DNA from: Styela clava | Lineage: Eukaryota | Reading direction: 5' to 3' | Length of the DNA: 64,000 bases | Assembly (NCBI RefSeq): GCF_964204865.1 | Contig: NC_135250.1 | Coordinates: forward strand, 17,670,001 to 17,734,000 | In this document: positions 27,905 to 60,601 of the stretch, one piece after another | Layout: each line of letters starts with the position of its first letter | Numbering within the stretch: position 1 is the first letter of the stretch | Program-made: the position numbers and the translations under genes | Notes under the pieces: generated by a model | Seen by the model: the letters and a program-made list of their open reading frames with translations, nothing else | Databases searched by the model: none | What the model was told of the DNA's origin: nothing

Positions 27905-52215
<24,311 letters not shown>

Positions 52216-53540
52216 GACCTTTAATAATCAAGTAGATCTTGTCTGCTAGTAAAGGCTAAGCTAAAACCTGAAAAACAAAGAAAGGAAATTTGCATAATCA
52301 CACAACTGAACAAATACTAGAACTGAACAAATACTAGATAGACTGAATACCTAATAAGTTACTGTTTCCGAGACAAATACAGTGTTTGTATTATTGCACC
52401 AAATGTCAAGACATCTCGGAAGCACAGAACTGTGCCCTACTGACTGTACTGAAACAGAAAAGGCCAAAACTGTATACTTTAAATGTGAAAGAGAAAATAT
52501 GTTCCAAAATAGAGCAAGTTCAACATAGAACACAATAAACAAAGAACCCTATGGACTTGGTATATCTGACAGTCTGAGGGTTAGGTCAGTGCTTTACCAA
52601 CCATGAGACCATAGAGAAATTCCTTTCCCCGGGAAAGAATATTGCTGTTTTAACCCTAGGGTTTCGGCCCGGTCATAAATGGCTGATCTGTGTCATAATT
52701 TGGGTTTATGACTAAATTAAATTTATTTTGGGGGGTCAATAGTATTTCATAGTGGTCTGCATGTGAACAAAACCAATTTCAAAACTCAAAATGTTTGAGT
52801 TTAAATACCCATGCTTGATCCGAGTGTTCTTAATTACGGTGATGTCATCATATTTTTTTTATGTATAATTTTTATTTTGCAACAAGGTCAATTTTATTTG
52901 TATGAGTATTTCAAAGCTTAAAAATAACCAAATAATCTATGGTTAGTTGAAAACGAAGTATTTTGAACGCGCGAGCAACGTTCTTCGGCTCATAATAAAC
53001 AAACAAAGATACCAGACAGCACGCGATCAAATGCTCTTCGATAAAACGAATATCACTTCACTTACAAATCCCAGTCTTGTTTTATCTTGAAAGTGACGTA
53101 TAGCTCTTCTAAAAGAGAACTCTTTCTCTCGCATATCAATCACGTGTCGACCACAGCGTTAAAAGTGAGAAACTTTTTCTCGAAATTTTTTGAAATTTCT
53201 CTCTTCTTACTGGCATATGGTCGGACGCATTTACGCTACGTAATGTGGGCGCGTTTTAGTGGAAAGCGACGAAAATAAGCTTTTTAGGGACACATTAAAG
53301 ATGTCTTTGGCATTTTTGGTTGGTGAAATATTAAAAAAATTATAGAAGGGTGTCAAAATGACCCAGGAACACCAGGGGTCATTAGGTTGGAGGAAATATA
53401 GAAATATTATTTTGTATAAAAAATTCCTATAATAAAAACATTTGAGAAATTTTAGGTGACAGTAAAAGCCCTGATAAAACATATTTTACAGTTGGCAAAT
53501 TCAAACAACAAACTGATTTTACATAGTGATAAAAAAAACA

Positions 53541-53692
53541 GATGAAAAAACATTATACAGGTAAAAAGAAATGAGGGTGCAAATATATACGAGGAAAAAA
53601 CATTATACAGGTAAAAAGAAATGAGGGTGCAAATATATATGATGAAAAAACATTATACAGCCACAGGTAAAAAGAAATGGGTGCAAATATAT
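53541..53692. repeat. Tandem repeat, about 3 x 50 bp
   Basis: ga(t/g)gaaaaaacattatacaggtaaaaagaaatgagggtgcaaatata starts at 53541, 53591 and 53641. Confidence 0.9.
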
Positions 53693-54200
53693 TAGGAATG
53701 ACCACAATTTATTTACAGGGAAATCATATTGTGAGACAAATTATGCTTTCATGATAAAACTGACAAATTTTACAGAAAACATAGTTATGTCAAAAATACA
53801 ATTTCTCAAAATAAACATTATTCAAACACATAAATGTTGATGAAACAAAACTCATGGGTCATTCCGTGATACCTGTAAAACTTTTAGGAATTGTCTAAGC
53901 ACATATAAACAATAGAAAACATTCTTGATACATATAAAAGTTCACAAAGTTACCACATAGTCTTATTATTGAAAATCTTATCTTAATTAAAATACAAATC
54001 CACTAGCTTGTCGGCAAGTTCAGTGAACACCTGAGTCTCCTGAGATCATGTTGAATATCAGGTAAGATTGAGGTTAACTGATCATTTGTGACATGATATT
54101 GATATATTTCTTTGATTGATTTCCTCTGAAATAATATTTTTTCAAGTCTGCAATTGGTAGATCATGATTGGGCTCAAATGATCAGACCAGTAAATGCAAC

Positions 54201-54560
54201 TTAGATACCCTTGATGCGCACCACAGCACGCCAGTTCTTGACCATCAAAGTTTGTCTCTTTGCATGAAGATTGGCATCTTCAAAAATATCAACCAATCGA
54301 GATTCTGCTGCTTCCTGTAATGCCATTATCGCTAAAGATTGCCAAAAAATGATATTTGGAGTTAATTTCATGCTGATTTCACGTACCAGTCTTGAAAAAG
54401 GCAATTTTCTTATAAGTAACTTTGTGCTCTTTTGATATTTTCTAACTTCATGTGATGTGTTTATACCAGGTATTCCCCTTTTTCGTGGTGTAGACTTTCT
54501 TCGCATTGATCCATGGGATGCATTTTGACGGTTAGATTGATGCAAAGACTTTCTCGTCAT
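54201..54560 (-). CDS. CENPA: Intronless, divergent histone H3-fold protein with CENP-A/CenH3 hallmarks; could be a paralog or a young pseudogene
   Basis: H3 fold [23 protein letters not shown]...WQ...ALQEAAE...[10 protein letters not shown]. CenH3-type changes: Q68>S, F84>W, T107>A, loop 1 one residue longer, and a non-H3 N-terminal tail. Confidence 0.7.
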
Positions 54561-56606
54561 GCTTGAGTATATTATTAAATAAAGCAGAAATAATGAACGT
54601 AGTAGGCTATATGTCAGTCAGGGATAGCCAATTAGAATAAAGTATTCAAATATCTCGTCATTCCAATATCGGAATTAACGTATATAAGAATATCGGATTT
54701 TTGCGTAATGTCACACATTTGCGACGTCTTCATTGAATGAGGACTTATCGATAGAAACTTGCGCATCGCACAAACAATCAGCACATGCTCACTCTCTTTG
54801 CAAAAATCTAGGTCATACATGTTCTTTCGCTTTGCAAAATTTTTTTTCTCTTCATTCTCCGTCTCGATTTTATTTTCAGTCCTCGCATGCTTTCTCACAA
54901 CAATCCAGTGCAATATATATTATTTCATTCCCTTTCCCAATTCAACGCCGCCTGCATGCTTTTCACTGTGCATGAACACAGCAGAATAACAATATGGTAC
55001 ACATAAATACTAGAGGCTTAAATATTAGCATTTGTATAAAGGCATAATGAATATTCGATTGTTGTGGCTTGCTTCAATTGCCTGTAGAGTGGCTTACCCA
55101 CTTTGCGACCACGACATATTTGCGGCCATCAACTTCATCGATCTAATTAATGCCGAAAAAATTAACGAATCGCGACGATATTTCTGACCCGTTATCGTCC
55201 TCTTGTTCCTCATAGCTCTGCGAAATTACACTGAAATGCGGCCACAAACAAAAAAGTTACGACCGAAAACCCGACCGAAGAAAAAAACAGGACCATTTTT
55301 TCATGTCGCCAACTACCCCTTGTCCCATCAAAAGAACTTGAAAATCCATACAAATATAAGAGATAAAAAGATGAAACTTGGCAAGGGGGTAGAGTTGTGT
55401 TCCTTCTAACCGTCTTTCGCCTTTCTACATTTAAAGGAGGGGGAATAGGGGGGTGCGCATTTCCAATACGTCGATAATATCTTTGTCGGCCAATTTGCGA
55501 CCACCATGTTTTTGTCTGTTTGATTGCTGTGATGCGGTGTTTTGAATATAATTTGACGAGTTTTGTTCGAAAGGACAGTGTTCTTAAAATATATGACGAT
55601 CAGAAATGCAATTAGAAGAAGGCTAGAAGCCCAATTTTCCATGCATGGCTGCGTATGCTCTAGTCTCGAGGCAGCAGAAACAATGTTCAAGGCTTGAAAT
55701 TCGTGGTCGCACACTGGTCGTTCGGTCGCAAATACGTCTTCCGAGTGTCGTACTTTGGGTGGTTTGTATAGCTTTAACCCCTGGTCGTAGAAAGGTTATT
55801 CGAGGTTTAGCGTGTAGAATAAATGCCAATGCGCCTACGGTGAAAAAATTAACGGGTTAGAAATATTGGTTTCTGTTTTATAGCGGTTTGAATGAAATCG
55901 TCCGCAGACTGGCTACACCACCCTATTGCCCATGAATTTTATTACTCTCAGAAAATATACAAAATTATCCGAATATAAATAGTACTTATGTCAATAGACT
56001 ATTATCGCAATACCATGTCCATGGGGATGGTACTGTAACATTGACAGAATCGGTCACAGAATTGCTTGGCTATCTTTTCATGTGGCCGATTGTACAAAGT
56101 GTACAATTAAAATAAATTTACTGTGTCACAAGTTGCTATTATTTCTATTGAAAGCTGTAAACTATTTACAGTATTAAGTATTTTTTGCATGGTGTGATAA
56201 ATTTTTCTCTGTCCCAAGCAGAATGTCATCATAGATCATCTATCCATCGCTATATAATGACAATACATCCCATTTAATTAAACAATTATTTTTTGCCTGT
56301 AATAAATAGTTCAGCGCATTCCCCTTCACCCAATCATTGAAACATCTAGCGTCTAGCCTACTCGCAGTTTTATTTTTTGTTTTTCAGGTTACTTCAAAGT
56401 GATTAAATGAAGTAAAACACATAAGGAAAAAATCAAACAAAGACATCGATACGGTATCCTGTGAAATAACAATCTTATTCCTATATCCTTGTCTGAAATC
56501 AATACCCAAGAATGAAAAACCTCACTTACTTTTTTTTTTTGCCAAATTCAAATCCATTGCCAAATCGGATTTATACAAATTATAGTTTTGGTGTATTCAA
56601 ATATAT

Positions 56607-57259
56607 CGACGCATGAAATCCAAATTGGGCTAAGTCCATTTTTCTAGTTTTGAGAAAAACGCAAAAAACGTTTTTTTTTTGTTTCTTTTTTTTATTTCTC
56701 TAATACCTTACATCGAGGATGTCTAGTTTTTATGGTCCACCAAAGTTACAATGAAGGCCATATTTAGATGGTATAAAAAAATTTGTGCTCCGCCCCAATT
56801 TTTTTTGGGGGGGTTTTTTTTGGACTTAACCCTTTTTGGCTCTCAATTTTCTTGACCAAAAACAATTTTATTGGACTTAGGGCCCCTTTATTATGTTATT
56901 ATAGAGGCTGGTATGGACTTAGCGCTTTGTATTATATTTTTTGAGAGGAGCTATGTCCAAAAAATGGACTTAGCGCTTTGTATTATATTTTTTGAGAGGA
57001 GCTATGTCCAAAAAACGGACTTAGCCCCAACTTACAATGCAGTTATCCAGAGATAAGTCCACTATAGTAGACACAGCTCTGTTTAGTTCTCAAATGCCCT
57101 AAAAAAAGCAGGGTTATGTCCATAGCTGTCTTGAGATCTAGAGCACCTAGAGATAAGGCAAATAGACCAAAATGTAGAGCTAAGTCCAGGAAAATCAGCA
57201 ATTGAAAAATGTCATTTTTTGGAAAAGTGGACTTAGCACTGTTTGGTTTTGAGGTGTCG
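56607..57259. mobile_element. MITE with about 40-bp TIRs and ATAT flanks (Sola1-like)
   Basis: Left end cgacgcatgaaatccaaattgggctaagtccatttttc; right end reverse complement cgacacctcaaaaccaaacagtgctaagtccacttttc; internal ~53-bp tandem duplication at about 56913-57016. Confidence 0.7.
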
Positions 57260-57485
57260 ATATATTTCAATATTATTGCATGAGGTCCGAATTTTATTTT
57301 TGTGATGTAATTTAGGTGATTTCATACAATGAAAGGTAAGACAAATATTAAATAATTCAGACCAGATACATTTACTATTTAATTCCATATGTCAGTATGT
57401 CCATTTGTGCATGAAGTTGAGACATTATTTTCCCATTATCATCAGTTATAATATATAATATAAATATTAATTAACCTATCATTAG

Positions 57486-60400
57486 CATTTTTATTTAAAA
57501 AAAAAAATTTTTTTGAAGAATTAGATAAATAATCAGAAAAACACCTATCATGCCATAGGTGATTTCTACATTTTCCATCTATGTAATCATTTTACACAAA
57601 TTAGTAAATACGGTAATCTGTTACAATGAAATCTGTTACATATTGTCATGAGATGGCCAGTGGTTGCATTGGAAACTTGATATTATAGCATGATGGATTT
57701 ATTTAAAACCTCATCAATGTGTTGATCTTGCATAATATCATTTCTGCATCCACTGTCCATCAAACCCATGCACCCCAATACCTTACATTTAAAAACTGCT
57801 CTCAAATTGCATTGCATCCCATAAATACCATCATATTTTATAGAGTTTCGATATTGCCAGATTGCTGACTTGCCACAAATCACAGTCAACAACACAGATT
57901 TGTTTTCAATGTTGTTGGCTATGATTTGGTCTGGATTAAGACGCCCTACATTGCACCAATCCCAAAAATTCTGTGCCCAATCACAATTAAAAAACGGATG
58001 AAAACACGTTTCCTCTACATTATCGCATAATACACATATGCCTGATTCGTCTCTGAACCAATATTTTAGTTTATCTGCGGTAGGCAGTCCATTATGTATG
58101 ATTTTCCAGCTGAGTTCTTTATACTTATTGGGTATTTGTATTTGCCAAAATTTTGTCCATGGGATAGGTTGGGTAAGATGTAGTTTGTTTGCGACATATA
58201 TATTATGATCATGAATTTGGTTATCCAATTGGTTTGATTTTAAGCGCTTATAAATATTTTTGGTTGTTAATTCTTCTGAAACCATATAACGATCAATTTC
58301 TGTTCTTGCCGGGGATGTATTTTGATTCTGGGCTAGAATTTCTTTCCAATTTGTTGGAATGTATCGCCAAATGTTGCGAATTTCGAAGTTGCATTTTCTA
58401 TTCAATGCAATTTTCCTCTCATATGATATATCTCTACCTGGTCTATAGTAAATTTGATTCACAAGGTCTCCTGAATTTTGTTCCACAATTTGTCCTAAAG
58501 TTAAAACTTTGGCTTGAATCCATTTAATTTCAAATTCTAAATTTGGCAGTTTTGTCTCCAAAGATAAAAATGAATTAAACCAGAGGCTTTCTAATTTTAC
58601 TTCCGCTGGGGAATTTGGTTGACAGCGTGTGAGATTGAGTTCCTTGAATGCATTAACTAAGTTTAAATAAAATTGTGGTATGAGATAGTTTCTTGTGTTT
58701 TTAACGTCTAAATACAAGCATTCCAAATTACCTCTGAAAATGAATGAGCAATAGTTATTTATATAAAATTTGGCCCGTTTACTCCAAGGTTTCTGTTCCC
58801 CTTTAAGTAATTTAATAATCCATTTCAATTGTATAGATTTCATCTTAGTGTTGATATCCATCATGTTTAATCCCCCCTTATTTATTTTTTCCTTAATGAT
58901 TTTTTGAGCAATCAATTGTGGTTTTCCATTCCATAAAAAGTAGAAGAGTTTAGTTTGTAATTTTTTCATGAAACTTTCCGGCATAATTTTGAATCCTGCT
59001 AAATACCAATTTTTTGATAACATTAGTGCTTTTGTAACCGTAATTTTTCCTATTATAGAAAGATTTCGGGCCTTCCATTGATTTATCAAGCTCTGGACGC
59101 TATTAAGAACCTTATTCCAATTTTTTTCAATGGAACAAGTGTTATTCCCTATGTATGCCCCCAATATTTTAATTTCATCTTTTTTTACTTCAATACCCTT
59201 GTAGTCTGGGCCAATGTTCCAATCAATTGCATTACCACACAATAAAATTTTACATTTCTGTTTGTTAATTTGTATTCCCGTACCCATTTTAAAGTGGTTT
59301 AATATTGCAAGACTTTCATCAATAGAGGCCAAATTTGTTACCGTTAAAGTTGTATCATCTGCATACCCTTTATACACCTCAGTATCCCCACTACAATTCC
59401 TAAATCCTAAAATATTTCTATTAGATTTGATATTAGTTGCTAATAGCTCAGCTATAAACAGATATAAATATGGTGCTAAGGGGCATCCTTGTCTCACTCC
59501 TCTTGTTAGCAAAAAATCTTCAGACAGGTATCCATTGGTAATAATTTTTGAACGAGTGTTACGATGCAGAATTTGAATCCATTTTTAAAAATATTCGCCG
59601 AAGCCCAATTTTCGTAAAAATCGTATTACTAATTCACGGTCGACCGTGTCATATGCTTTCTCTTGGTCGATAGAAAATATAATAAGAGGTATATTTTGTT
59701 GATTAGCCCAGAAGATGTCATCCCTAAGAGTTATCAAATTTTCATGAATCACCCCGCCAAAAATAAATCCAGTTTGATCTTGTCCAATTAGTTCCGGCAA
59801 TACATTTTTTAATCTATTTGCTAATAATTTTTCTATGAGTTTATATTCAAAATTTAACAAGGATATTGGGCGCCAGTTTTTCAAATCATCTTTGTCTCCA
59901 CTTTTACATAAAAGTGTTATGACACCTAAAGCTGAATCGTGAGACATTTCACCTATATTATGAAAGCTTTTATAAAGAAGAAGTAGAATCGGTTTGAGTT
60001 GTTTCCAAAATTTAGCGTAAAACTCTTTCGTCAAGCCATCTATGCCCGGTGATTTGTTATCTTTCATATCTCGGAATGTTTCATCCAATTCTTTATCCGT
60101 AATTTCTCTTTCTAAAGAGTCTTTTTCAAGATTTGTCAACTTTTTTTCAAATTTTTGGATTAAGCTATTTCGGGATGTTTTATCAATACTTCTATTCTTA
60201 CTGTATAACTTATGATGAAAAGAAATCTGAGTATCTTGAATTTCTTTCAGAGAGTAAACCAAACTTACATTCGGCTTTCTCAGGGCTCTAAACATACGCT
60301 TCTTTCCATTTGATTTCTCTAAATTCAAAAAGTATTTGGTAGATTTTTCACCTTTTTCTGCCCACTTTATGCGCGACCTTATAATTGCACCATTGGTTTT

Positions 60401-60601
60401 AGTTTTATAATGCAGTTTAATTTGTTTTTCTAGTTCCTGTACCTTTTTCGATATTTCGTCATCTTCAATGTACCTTAACATTTCATCATATGCTATCCTG
60501 TATTTGAGTAATAGTTCTTGCTCTAATTCATTTTCCTGTTGGTATTTTATTTTAGCACAGTGTATCGCCCATGTTTTGACTTTCTTTTTACAAATATCCC
60601 A
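57486..60601 (-). mobile_element. 5'-truncated non-LTR retrotransposon, Tx1/L1 clade (ORF2: RT plus C-terminal zinc finger)
   Basis: Motifs GAIIRSR..W.EKGEKSTKYF, KSPGIDG, NWRPISLLN, DQEKAYD, RGVRQGCPL, YADD and CxxC..E..H...C. The two ORF-track pieces share one frame, split by a single TAA at 59585-59587. No endonuclease domain. The 3' end position is approximate. Confidence 0.9.

What the first reader, a model, noticed from the sequence alone, without database searches (positions are those of the whole stretch)
54201..54560. Intronless CENP-A-like ORF missing the H3-H3' tetramer interface
Seen: an uninterrupted 119-codon ORF with CenH3 diagnostics (LPFSRL, WQ, EDAN, longer loop 1, unrelated tail). 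It also has an in-frame 3-aa deletion (NLHAK vs H3 NLCAIHAK), D123>N, I124>W, Y99>R and a divergent alpha-N helix. Known: C110, H113 and D123 form the four-helix bundle joining two H3-H4 or CENP-A-H4 dimers. Inference: this is unlikely to be the normal centromeric CENP-A. It could be a decaying paralog, or a variant that binds H4 or the chaperone but cannot tetramerise (dominant-negative or germline-specific). No histone stem-loop or poly(A) remnant follows the stop codon.
Basis: partly seen in the sequence, partly recalled or inferred. Interest (0 to 1): 0.75.

Follow-up and report, generated by a model that had tools for sequence, protein, structure and literature searches.

The report
Retrocopy of the centromeric histone gene
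This intronless ORF is a young reverse-transcribed copy of the sea squirt's real, intron-bearing centromeric histone H3 gene, which sits on another chromosome, and it is most likely an ordinary processed pseudogene that still reads open in the reference genome.

Summary

**Origin.** It is not a free-standing odd CENP-A. The genome is Styela clava. It has one intron-bearing CenH3 gene on contig C3 (3 exons, 122 aa, XP_039268190.1). The window ORF is its processed retrocopy:
- both introns are missing exactly;
- homology covers only the mRNA (38 nt of 5'UTR, about 790 nt of 3'UTR);
- it lies on another chromosome.

The parent keeps NLLAIHAK, KD and ALRE. So the 3-aa deletion, D>N, L>W and the altered alpha-N arose in the copy.

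**Selection.** dN/dS against the parent is 0.82 (bootstrap 0.40-2.23). That fits neutral decay and does not fit purifying selection. An open frame at this divergence is expected in about 37% of neutral trials.

**Expression.** Three spliced RNA data sets cover the copy. It sits within a transcribed stretch running into the 5' exons of the neighbouring SMARCA2/4-like gene. At least 19 upstream ATGs precede its start codon. One RNA data set carries a 7-nt frameshift allele.

**Verdict.** A young transcribed processed pseudogene is most likely (about 0.7). A functional tetramer-deficient variant is not excluded (about 0.15). The scan had not noted this before. Interest is low.

The parts
54201..54560 (-). 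119-codon CenH3-like ORF of the retrocopy (ATG 54560-54558, TAA 54203-54201)
   Evidence: 100% self-match, and the only such copy in the genome.
54561..54598 (-). Stretch derived from the parent's 5'UTR. Homology to the parent stops here.
   Evidence: blastn HSP window 54598-54464 against C3 12231349-12231209, 88%; flank alignment.
53415..54200 (-). Stretch derived from the parent's 3'UTR (about 790 nt). Mismatch is 8-13% where aligned, with many indels.
54268..54269 (-). Site of the in-frame 9-nt deletion relative to the parent (removes L-A-I of NLLAIHAK)
   Evidence: exon 3 alignment; protein alignments.
53405..53415 (-). Weak A-rich patch (8 of 11 A) where homology to the parent ends; a possible decayed poly(A) tail
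   Evidence: Inconclusive.
53545..53700 (-). About 48-50-nt unit repeated three times inside the 3'UTR-derived part (the parent has one). One unit is missing in run X2.
   Evidence: alignment; 50-nt skip 53543-53594 in X2.
54298..54304 (-). 7 nt absent from the retrocopy contig of RNA run X2. This is a frameshift at codons 86-88.
   Evidence: table 4 (X2 depth 11.9 of 11.9) and table 8 record 16. Not seen in X1, X5 or X10.
52654..53388 (.). 735-nt high-copy repeat inserted in the reference just 3' of the retrocopy. It is skipped by a contig in all 4 runs laid, the DNA-sized run included, so it is an insertion polymorphism and not an intron.
   Evidence: tables 2, 5 and 8
52349..52653 (-). Transcribed stretch continuous with the retrocopy in RNA contigs; it ends at a GT donor (83-nt intron)
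   Evidence: X1 record 1
52037..52265 (-). Spliced exon holding the likely start codon (ATG at 52215) of the P/Q-rich SMARCA2/4-like gene
51598..51718 (-). Next spliced exon of the same transcript. It is joined onward to an exon ending at 49943.
   Evidence: joint 51718-52037; loose end at 51598
54599..55280 (.). Upstream flank with no homology to the parent, covered by RNA contigs that run into the retrocopy. It holds 19 ATGs on the minus strand before the ORF's ATG.
   Evidence: X1 54471-55242, X2 54364-55280, X5 54485-55146

Best explanation
The ORF is a processed retrocopy of the Styela clava CenH3 gene. An mRNA of the 3-exon gene on contig C3 was reverse-transcribed, presumably by LINE machinery. 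It was inserted on contig C1, in sense orientation, a few hundred bases upstream of the start codon of a SMARCA2/4-like SWI/SNF ATPase gene.

Since then the two copies have diverged by about 10%. The copy acquired a 9-nt in-frame deletion at the end of helix alpha-2. It also changed nearly invariant H3-fold residues (A35T, L36S, D109N).

It is transcribed as part of a long leader or read-through RNA of the host locus, and I saw no sign of a promoter of its own. It is most likely a young processed pseudogene whose frame is still open in the reference haplotype by chance. The frame is already broken in at least one other allele.

Shown: the retrocopy origin, the divergence figures, the RNA coverage and its link to the spliced exons, and the frameshift contig. 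Inferred: LINE-mediated insertion, passive transcription, and absence of a protein function.
For: **Origin**
- The parent has exons of 94, 80 and 195 nt and GT..AG introns of 1067 and 569 nt. Both introns are absent exactly in the window copy.
- Homology is limited to the mRNA, window 54598 to about 53415.
- A DNA search of the whole genome finds only this copy and the three parental exons.
- A protein search gave 91 matches: 1 is the ORF itself, 3 are the C3 exon pieces, and 87 are at 48-58% identity. The 7 of those outside the regular array that I fetched are all H3/H3.3 or broken H3.
- Copy and parent are sisters at 100/100 support.

**No sign of constraint**
- Sd 9, Nd 27, dS 0.127, dN 0.104, dN/dS 0.82, bootstrap 0.40-2.23. 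A dN/dS of 0.2 is rejected (P 1e-4). Values of 0.5 (P 0.12) and 1 are not rejected.
- An ORF of this sequence survives 18 random substitutions in 37% of trials.
- Copy-only departures from columns at least 90% conserved in 97 H3/CenH3 sequences: A35T, L36S and D109N. The 3-aa gap is a further copy-only change.
- X2 carries a 7-nt deletion at 54298-54304. It lies 9 nt from a copy-specific base, so it sits on the copy and not the parent.
- The exact protein is absent from a collection of 15 billion proteins, while the parent is there as XP_039268190.1.

**Passive transcription**
- X1 contig 1 joins 54319-53389 to 52653-52349. It then runs across two minus-strand GT..AG introns to 52265-52037 and 51718-51598. 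Those two splice joints are absent from the DNA-sized run X10.
- RNA contigs run at least 680 nt upstream of the copy's 5' end.
- That stretch holds 19 upstream ATGs.
Against: - The frame is open in the reference and in X1.
- Differences are far from evenly spread: 5 in 162 nt of the fold core against 31 in 192 nt elsewhere (Fisher 3e-5). The core is more conserved than the 3'UTR (P 0.008 or lower at the full pairwise UTR rate). If the copy were neutral and the parent's core frozen, P is 0.36 at the low UTR rate and 0.044 at the high rate. So some constraint on the copy's core cannot be ruled out.
- The copy's tip branch on the protein tree (0.13) is not longer than the parent's (0.19).
- The copy keeps three nearly invariant residues that the parent has lost: P31, R115 and G118.
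- The 3'UTR has about a dozen indels in about 790 nt (my count by eye). The ORF has only one, and it is in frame.
- No target-site duplication of 7 nt or more and no clean poly(A) tail were found.
- The frameshift allele rests on one contig at depth about 12 in one run.
- Contigs cannot show strand, transcript ends or expression level. A separate mRNA starting near 54600 is therefore not excluded.
Confidence: 0.7

Rival explanations
1. A functional young retrogene. The copy is translated into a CenH3 variant with an altered or disabled CenH3-CenH3' four-helix bundle (shortened alpha-2, D>N, L>W). It could act as a germline-specific variant, or as a modulator that binds H4 or the chaperone without forming tetramers.
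For: - The ORF is open in the reference and RNA covers it in X1, apart from 54320-54363.
- The fold core is strongly conserved relative to the periphery and the 3'UTR.
- The only indel in the ORF is in frame.
- Nonsynonymous changes cluster in alpha-N, loop 1 and alpha-3, which is as expected for adaptive change.
- AlphaFold2 still predicts alpha-N, alpha-1, alpha-2 and alpha-3.
- C110 and the H113-D123' bond belong to the H3-H3' bundle (PMC11001638, passages).
- CenH3 paralogs with separate roles are known in flies (PMC9577544, passages).
Against: - dN/dS is 0.82, not below 0.5.
- Nearly invariant A35, L36 and D109 are lost.
- X2 carries a frameshift allele.
- No promoter of its own was seen, and there are 19 upstream ATGs if the RNA starts where the contigs do.
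- The protein is not in any annotation searched.
- No ortholog above 57% identity apart from the parent was found among 5.8 billion protein clusters.
Confidence: 0.15
2. A non-coding role. The inserted sequence matters as RNA or DNA and not as protein. It could be part of the 5' leader or outron of the SMARCA2/4-like gene, acting as a long upstream ORF that lowers translation or as promoter-proximal sequence. It could also pair with, or compete for factors with, the parent's mRNA.
For: - The copy is physically continuous with spliced SMARCA-like exons in X1.
- It lies about 1.17 kb (in the repeat-free, spliced form) upstream of the likely ATG at 52215, with 25 ATGs in between.
- Stretches of 37-57 nt are identical or nearly identical to the parent.
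Against: - There is no evidence of any effect.
- Such a leader would be a poor mRNA for SMARCA, so it is more likely removed or a minor form.
- The region tolerates a 735-nt repeat insertion and a tandem-unit copy-number change, which argues for little constraint.
Confidence: 0.1
3. A DNA-level (segmental) duplicate of the CenH3 gene that later lost both introns. Alternatively, the window copy is the original and the C3 gene gained its introns.
For: No target-site duplication and no clean poly(A) tail were found.
Against: - Both introns are absent to the base, and homology stops within about 40 nt of the ATG and at the end of the 3'UTR. No promoter or downstream homology appeared in 7 kb against 9 kb.
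- The C3 copy keeps the H3-like states at the deletion, at D123 and at ALRE.
- The C3 copy is the one annotated.
- A parent-lettered contig in X1 has depth 104.6, so the parent is expressed.
Confidence: 0.03

Closest known systems
Processed (retroposed) copies of CENP-A/CenH3 genes, e.g. the cow CENP-A gene family (Li and Huang 2008, known to me only as cited in PMC9577544; content recalled, paper not read)
   Same: An intronless copy of the centromeric histone gene on another chromosome, made from the mRNA, with an ORF that may or may not still be used.
   Different: This one is in a tunicate. It carries a 3-aa deletion at the end of alpha-2. It is embedded in the 5' leader region of a SWI/SNF ATPase gene. 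No tissue-specific expression is known.
Retained CenH3 paralogs of Drosophila (Cid1-5), mosquitoes, plants and Caenorhabditis (PMC9577544, passages read)
   Same: Duplication of CenH3 with divergence concentrated in the tail, loop 1 and the C-terminal part.
   Different: By the passages read, the paralogs analysed there are expressed and judged functionally retained. The Caenorhabditis ones have pairwise dS of 0.15-0.74. Here dS is 0.127, dN/dS is 0.82, the copy arose by retroposition, and a frameshift allele is present.
Canonical H3 and H3.3 of the same genome
   Same: H3-type histone fold; 48-58% identity.
   Different: The N-tail differs, loop 1 is one residue longer, and WQ replaces FQ. 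There is no 3' stem-loop. The H3 genes form a separate clade.

Membership tests
Processed retrocopy | All parental introns absent exactly | tested here: met
   Introns of 1067 and 569 nt (GT..AG) in the C3 gene. The copy is continuous across both junctions.
Processed retrocopy | Homology confined to the mature mRNA (5'UTR to 3' end) | tested here: met
   Only three HSPs in 7 kb against 9 kb. Homology runs from window 54598 to about 53415.
Processed retrocopy | Location unlinked to the parent | tested here: met
   C1:17.72 Mb against C3:12.23 Mb.
Processed retrocopy | Poly(A) tail at the 3' end | tested here: inconclusive
   Only an 11-nt patch with 8 A at 53405-53415. The parent's AATAAA lies about 35 nt beyond the end of homology.
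Processed retrocopy | Target-site duplications | tested here: not met
   No shared word of 7 nt or more between the flanks, with or without the 735-nt repeat. Shorter or decayed duplications would be missed.
CenH3 / CENP-A | H3-type histone fold | tested here: met
   PF00125 at 8.9e-22; best solved match is the H3/CENP-A chimera 5z23.
CenH3 / CENP-A | Loop 1 longer than in H3, and an N-tail unrelated to H3 (criteria recalled from the CenH3 literature) | tested here: met
   One extra residue against H3, the same length as 3 of the 6 animal CenH3s aligned. The tail is unalignable.
CenH3 / CENP-A | Distinct from H3/H3.3 in a tree | tested here: met
   The Styela H3s form their own clade (100/99). 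Copy and parent sit on a long separate stem. Grouping with other CenH3s is unresolved.
CenH3 / CENP-A | Centromere localisation and essential role | not testable with these tools
   Needs a tagged protein or ChIP.
Functional retrogene | Open frame kept in the species | tested here: inconclusive
   Open in the reference. No change was seen where X1, X5 and X10 cover it. X2 carries a 7-nt frameshift.
Functional retrogene | dN/dS against the parent below 0.5 | tested here: not met
   0.82, bootstrap 0.40-2.23; P 0.12 against 0.5.
Functional retrogene | An mRNA of its own, and translation | tested here: inconclusive
   RNA contigs cover it but run on at both ends. There are 19 upstream ATGs. Contigs show neither transcript ends nor strand.
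Functional retrogene | Conserved in related species | not testable with these tools
   No other tunicate genome could be searched. The protein search found no relative above 57% identity other than the parent.

The most novel reading that the evidence does not exclude
A young, expressed CenH3 retrogene rides on the promoter of the SWI/SNF ATPase gene. It encodes a centromeric histone whose alpha-2/alpha-3 dimerisation surface has been remodelled (one helical turn shorter, D>N, L>W). The protein would pair with H4 or the chaperone but could not form the (CenH3-H4)2 tetramer. It would thereby tune or antagonise centromere assembly. It would be still polymorphic for a null allele, that is, a CenH3 paralog caught at birth.
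Probability: 0.1. Interest if true: 0.7.

Novelty: new member of a known kind. Interest (0 to 1): 0.25.

Why it matters
The main value is clean annotation. The window ORF should not be taken for the species' CenH3. The true gene is the 3-exon locus on C3, which NCBI names 'histone H3.4-like'.

The copy also works as a dated snapshot of the parent mRNA. It keeps P31, R115 and G118, which the working CenH3 has since changed. So the functional centromeric histone of this tunicate has altered three nearly invariant fold residues within a synonymous divergence of about 0.13. That bears modestly on rapid CenH3 evolution.

If the copy proved to be translated, it would be a natural tetramer-interface mutant of CenH3.

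Tried and rejected
**Target-site duplications and a poly(A) tail.** None were convincing.

**Structure.** AlphaFold2 of the copy gave pLDDT 69.5. Foldseek against PDB gave H3 chains on top with TM only about 0.35 and rmsd about 9 A. An isolated histone monomer is not informative about the dimer-dimer interface. I used only the helix boundaries and did not fold the parent.

**Gene conversion.** X2 record 17 shows 9 parent-like letters at 54421-54470. I rejected gene conversion as the reading. The cluster lies between stretches of 57 and 44 nt shared with the parent. Contigs of X1, X5 and X10 break at exactly such stretches. X1 shows the mirror case, with parent letters at 54327-54363. A de Bruijn bubble resolved in favour of the more abundant parent mRNA explains all of this. 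Gene conversion is not excluded.

**The 735-nt skip as an intron.** Rejected, because the DNA-sized run X10 skips it too.

**Other CenH3 paralogs.** None were found.

**Histone stem-loop.** None at the copy or the parent; the positive control was found.

**Closer outgroups for polarising changes.** None are in the protein database. The next hit after the parent has 57% identity. I used 6 animal CenH3s plus Styela H3 and a 97-row alignment.

**Papers.**
- 'CENP-A' + 'retrogene': 18 papers, 15 listed, none on tunicates by title (listing only).
- 'Styela clava' + 'centromere': 2 papers, both unrelated by title (listing only).
- 'CENP-A' + 'H115A' + 'L128A': 0 papers.
- 'CenH3' + 'paralogs' + 'retrotransposition': 13 papers. 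I read passages of PMC9577544.
- Passages of PMC11001638 were read for the H3-H3' bundle.
- Supplements were not opened.

**Parental exons not joined.** The spliced parental model was never joined for a search. dN/dS was pooled from per-exon codon pairs, and the split codon at the exon 1/2 junction was dropped. The parent protein was taken from the database entry P0001.

Full report
**Observation.** The ORF exists as described, on the minus strand of window 54201-54560 (119 aa).
- It is an H3-family histone fold (PF00125, E 8.9e-22).
- The best solved relatives are H3/CENP-A chimeras, followed by H3.
- The HMMER alignments and the MAFFT alignment confirm a 3-residue gap (NL---HAK), N and W at the D123 and I124 columns, R at the Y99 column, a loop 1 one residue longer than H3, WQ, and a divergent alpha-N.

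**Organism and parent gene.** A protein search returned one close relative (76% identity over 100% of the query). It is a 122-aa protein of Styela clava on a contig of 25,587,678 bp. Its accession is XP_039268190.1 and NCBI names it 'histone H3.4-like'. That is the length of contig C3 of this genome.

A six-frame search of the whole genome gave 91 matches:
- 1 is the window ORF itself.
- 3 are pieces on C3 minus strand: query 1-32 at 81%, 32-60 at 79%, and 50-118 at 66%.
- 87 are H3-type matches at 48-58% identity, most of them in a 5.75-kb tandem array on C8.

I fetched the 7 matches outside the regular array. All are 93-98% identical to H3/H3.3, or are broken H3 copies. A DNA search with the whole copy found only itself and the three C3 pieces. 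So the genome has exactly two CenH3-like loci.

**Retrocopy origin.** The C3 gene has exons of 94, 80 and 195 nt (369 nt, which is 122 codons plus the stop). Its GT..AG introns are 1067 and 569 nt long. By reading, the exon translations equal P0001.

Comparisons were made exon by exon, or with the database protein.

- The window copy is continuous across both exon junctions.
- In 7 kb of window against 9 kb of C3, blastn finds only three HSPs. Exon 1 plus 38-44 nt upstream gives 88%. Exon 2 gives 97% over 66 nt, or 71 of 80 nt over the whole exon. Exon 3 plus about 790 nt downstream gives 75% with gaps counted.
- Where the 3'UTRs align, mismatch is 8% (the four cleanest blocks) to 13% (all blocks). 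The rest is indels, including a roughly 48-nt unit present three times in the copy.
- Homology ends at about 53415 in an 11-nt A-rich patch.
- No target-site duplication of 7 nt or more was found.
- Neither locus has a histone 3' stem-loop. The canonical H3 has one.

Precise intron loss, mRNA-shaped boundaries and a different chromosome make retroposition the only good reading. The missing poly(A) tail and target-site duplication are the weak points.

**Which copy changed.** The parent reads NLLAIHAK, KD and ANALRE. So the 9-nt deletion, D>N, L>W and the TSH of alpha-N are derived in the copy.

In an alignment of 97 H3/CenH3 sequences:
- The copy alone departs from columns at least 90% conserved at A35T, L36S and D109N. 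The gap is a further copy-only change.
- The parent alone departs at P31A, R115L and G118D.
- Both depart at six further columns.

On a maximum-likelihood tree the two are sisters (100/100) on a long stem. The tips are 0.13 (copy) and 0.19 (parent). The working CenH3 is therefore itself evolving fast, and the copy preserves some ancestral states.

**Selection.** Nei-Gojobori counts were pooled over per-exon codon pairs. That made 118 codons, with the split codon, the 3 deleted codons and the stop left out.
- Sd 9, Nd 27, dS 0.127, dN 0.104, dN/dS 0.82, bootstrap 0.40-2.23.
- dN/dS = 0.2 is rejected (P 1e-4). Values of 0.5 (P 0.12) and 1 are not.
- Random substitution of the ORF leaves it open in 52%, 37%, 27% and 15% of trials for 12, 18, 24 and 36 changes. 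The open frame is therefore unremarkable.

Against a simple neutral picture:
- Differences are clustered, 5 in 162 nt of the core (codons 38-65 and 73-98) against 31 in 192 nt elsewhere (Fisher 3e-5).
- The core is more conserved than the 3'UTR. This is compatible with a neutral copy plus a frozen parental core at the low UTR rate (P 0.36). It is marginal at the high rate (P 0.044).
- The ORF has one in-frame indel, while the 3'UTR has about a dozen (my count by eye).

**Transcription and context.** Thirteen public runs from 4 studies hold the stretch. I laid 4 of them: X1, X2 and X5, which have RNA-sized contig sets, and X10, which is DNA-sized.

Evidence that X1, X2 and X5 are RNA:
- X1 contig 1 (1810 nt) runs 54319-53389, skips 52654-53388, and continues 52653-52349.
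- It then crosses an 83-nt and a 318-nt gap whose ends are GT..AG on the minus strand.
- It continues to 52265-52037 and 51718-51598, with 224 more letters that match window 49914-49943.
- The 318-nt joint is also in X2, and the same onward loose end is in X2 and X5.
- Neither splice joint is in X10, whose contig is continuous there.
- So these runs are RNA, and the transcript is on the ORF's strand.

The 735-nt skip is also in X10. It covers a repeat with word depth in the thousands. It is therefore an insertion polymorphism, not an intron.

The downstream exons belong to a SMARCA2/4-like gene. The evidence is a QLQ domain at 2.5e-12 and an HSA domain at 1.4e-9 in further exons. The P/Q-rich first coding exon has its ATG at 52215.

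Upstream, RNA contigs cross the copy's 5' boundary and reach 55242 (X1), 55280 (X2) and 55146 (X5).
- That 720-nt stretch has 19 ATGs before the ORF's ATG.
- 25 more ATGs lie between the ORF's stop and the SMARCA-like ATG.
- The simplest reading is that the copy landed in the 5' leader or outron region of the host gene and is transcribed with it.

Contigs cannot show transcript ends, strand or level, so a separate mRNA is not excluded.

Copy-specific letters are covered as follows:
- X1: 53389-54319 and about 54421-55242. At 54327-54363 only a parent-lettered contig (depth 104.6) lies.
- X2: 53389-54393 and 54471-55280.
- X5: 53389-53573, 53610-54319 and 54485-55146.

**A broken allele.** X2 contig 16 (53389-54393) lacks 7 nt at 54298-54304, which falls in codons 86-88. 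It has one further change at 54332, and its depth is 11.9 of 11.9 at that site. X1, X5 and X10 do not show the deletion. The contig carries copy-specific letters on both sides, and the nearest is only 9 nt from the deletion. So the deletion sits on the copy and not on the parent. This is one contig in one run. A more abundant intact path would have been kept instead, so the sample may be heterozygous at most.

**Structure.**
- AlphaFold2 with the 97-row alignment predicts helices 33-51, 55-66, 73-99 and 107-117 (pLDDT 69.5). The fold is predicted, with alpha-2 ending at the histidine that aligns with H113.
- Foldseek gives H3 chains but poor superposition. This is expected for a lone histone and says nothing about tetramers.
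- C110 lies in the H3-H3' bundle and H113-D123' is a stable bond there, by the passages read in PMC11001638.
It remains untested.

**Comparison with what is known.** CenH3 duplications are known in cows, flies, mosquitoes, nematodes and plants (PMC9577544, passages). A retrocopy of CenH3 is therefore a known kind. I found no paper on a tunicate case (listings).

**Limits.**
I could not see the public annotation of this locus beyond the fact that the protein is not on record.
- No other tunicate genome could be searched.
- Only contigs, not raw reads, were available.

**Verdict.** The ORF is a young retrocopy of the CenH3 gene. It is most likely a transcribed processed pseudogene. Function as a protein is unlikely but not excluded.

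Noticed in passing
G000 C3:12229301-12231305 (L031 3302-5306), minus strand: The true CenH3 candidate of Styela clava is only 122 aa, with a tail of about 30 aa. It ends right after alpha-3 (…LIKDI), without the C-terminal xxGLG-type tail seen in 3 of the 6 animal CenH3s aligned. It has changed the nearly invariant P31, R115 and G118. NCBI names it 'histone H3.4-like'.
   Followed up: partly
window 44300-52265, minus strand: A SMARCA2/4-like SWI/SNF ATPase gene. It has a P/Q-rich first coding exon (ATG 52215), a QLQ exon at 47927-48343 and an HSA exon at 45610-45741. Its 5' exons are spliced with introns of 83 and 318 nt. X2 and X5 have contigs that keep the 83-nt intron.
   Followed up: partly
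window 52654-53388: A 735-nt high-copy repeat (DNA word depth 5,000-9,700) present in the reference. A contig skips it in 4 of 4 runs laid, so it is an insertion polymorphism next to the retrocopy's 3' end. No clear terminal inverted repeats were found.
   Followed up: partly
window 53545-53700: A 48-50-nt unit repeated three times in the copy's 3'UTR-derived part, against once in the parent. One unit is missing in run X2, so the copy number varies.
   Followed up: no
window 57686-60481, minus strand: A LINE-type reverse transcriptase relic split into two ORFs (298 aa with RVT_1; 609 aa with RVT_1 and zf-RVT). It lies upstream on the same strand as the retrocopy, in a block of high-copy repeats (55243-57400).
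   Followed up: partly
G000 C8:7.29-7.84 Mb (e.g. L002): A tandem histone array with a period of about 5.75 kb and more than 70 H3 matches, in blocks of both orientations. The unit holds H4, H3, H2B and H2A. H3 has the 3' stem-loop 19 nt after the stop (RF00032, 38.5 bits).
   Followed up: partly
G000 C17:17082900-17085200 (L035): A broken H3.3-type copy with an in-frame TAG, a garbled stretch after PHR and a 21-residue gap. It lies about 19 kb from an intact intronless H3.3-type gene (L034).
   Followed up: no
window 54421-54470 in run X2; 54327-54363 in run X1: Contigs show parent-type letters in clusters bounded by stretches shared with the parent. This is most likely assembly bubbles resolved toward the more abundant parent mRNA. 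Gene conversion is not excluded.
   Followed up: partly
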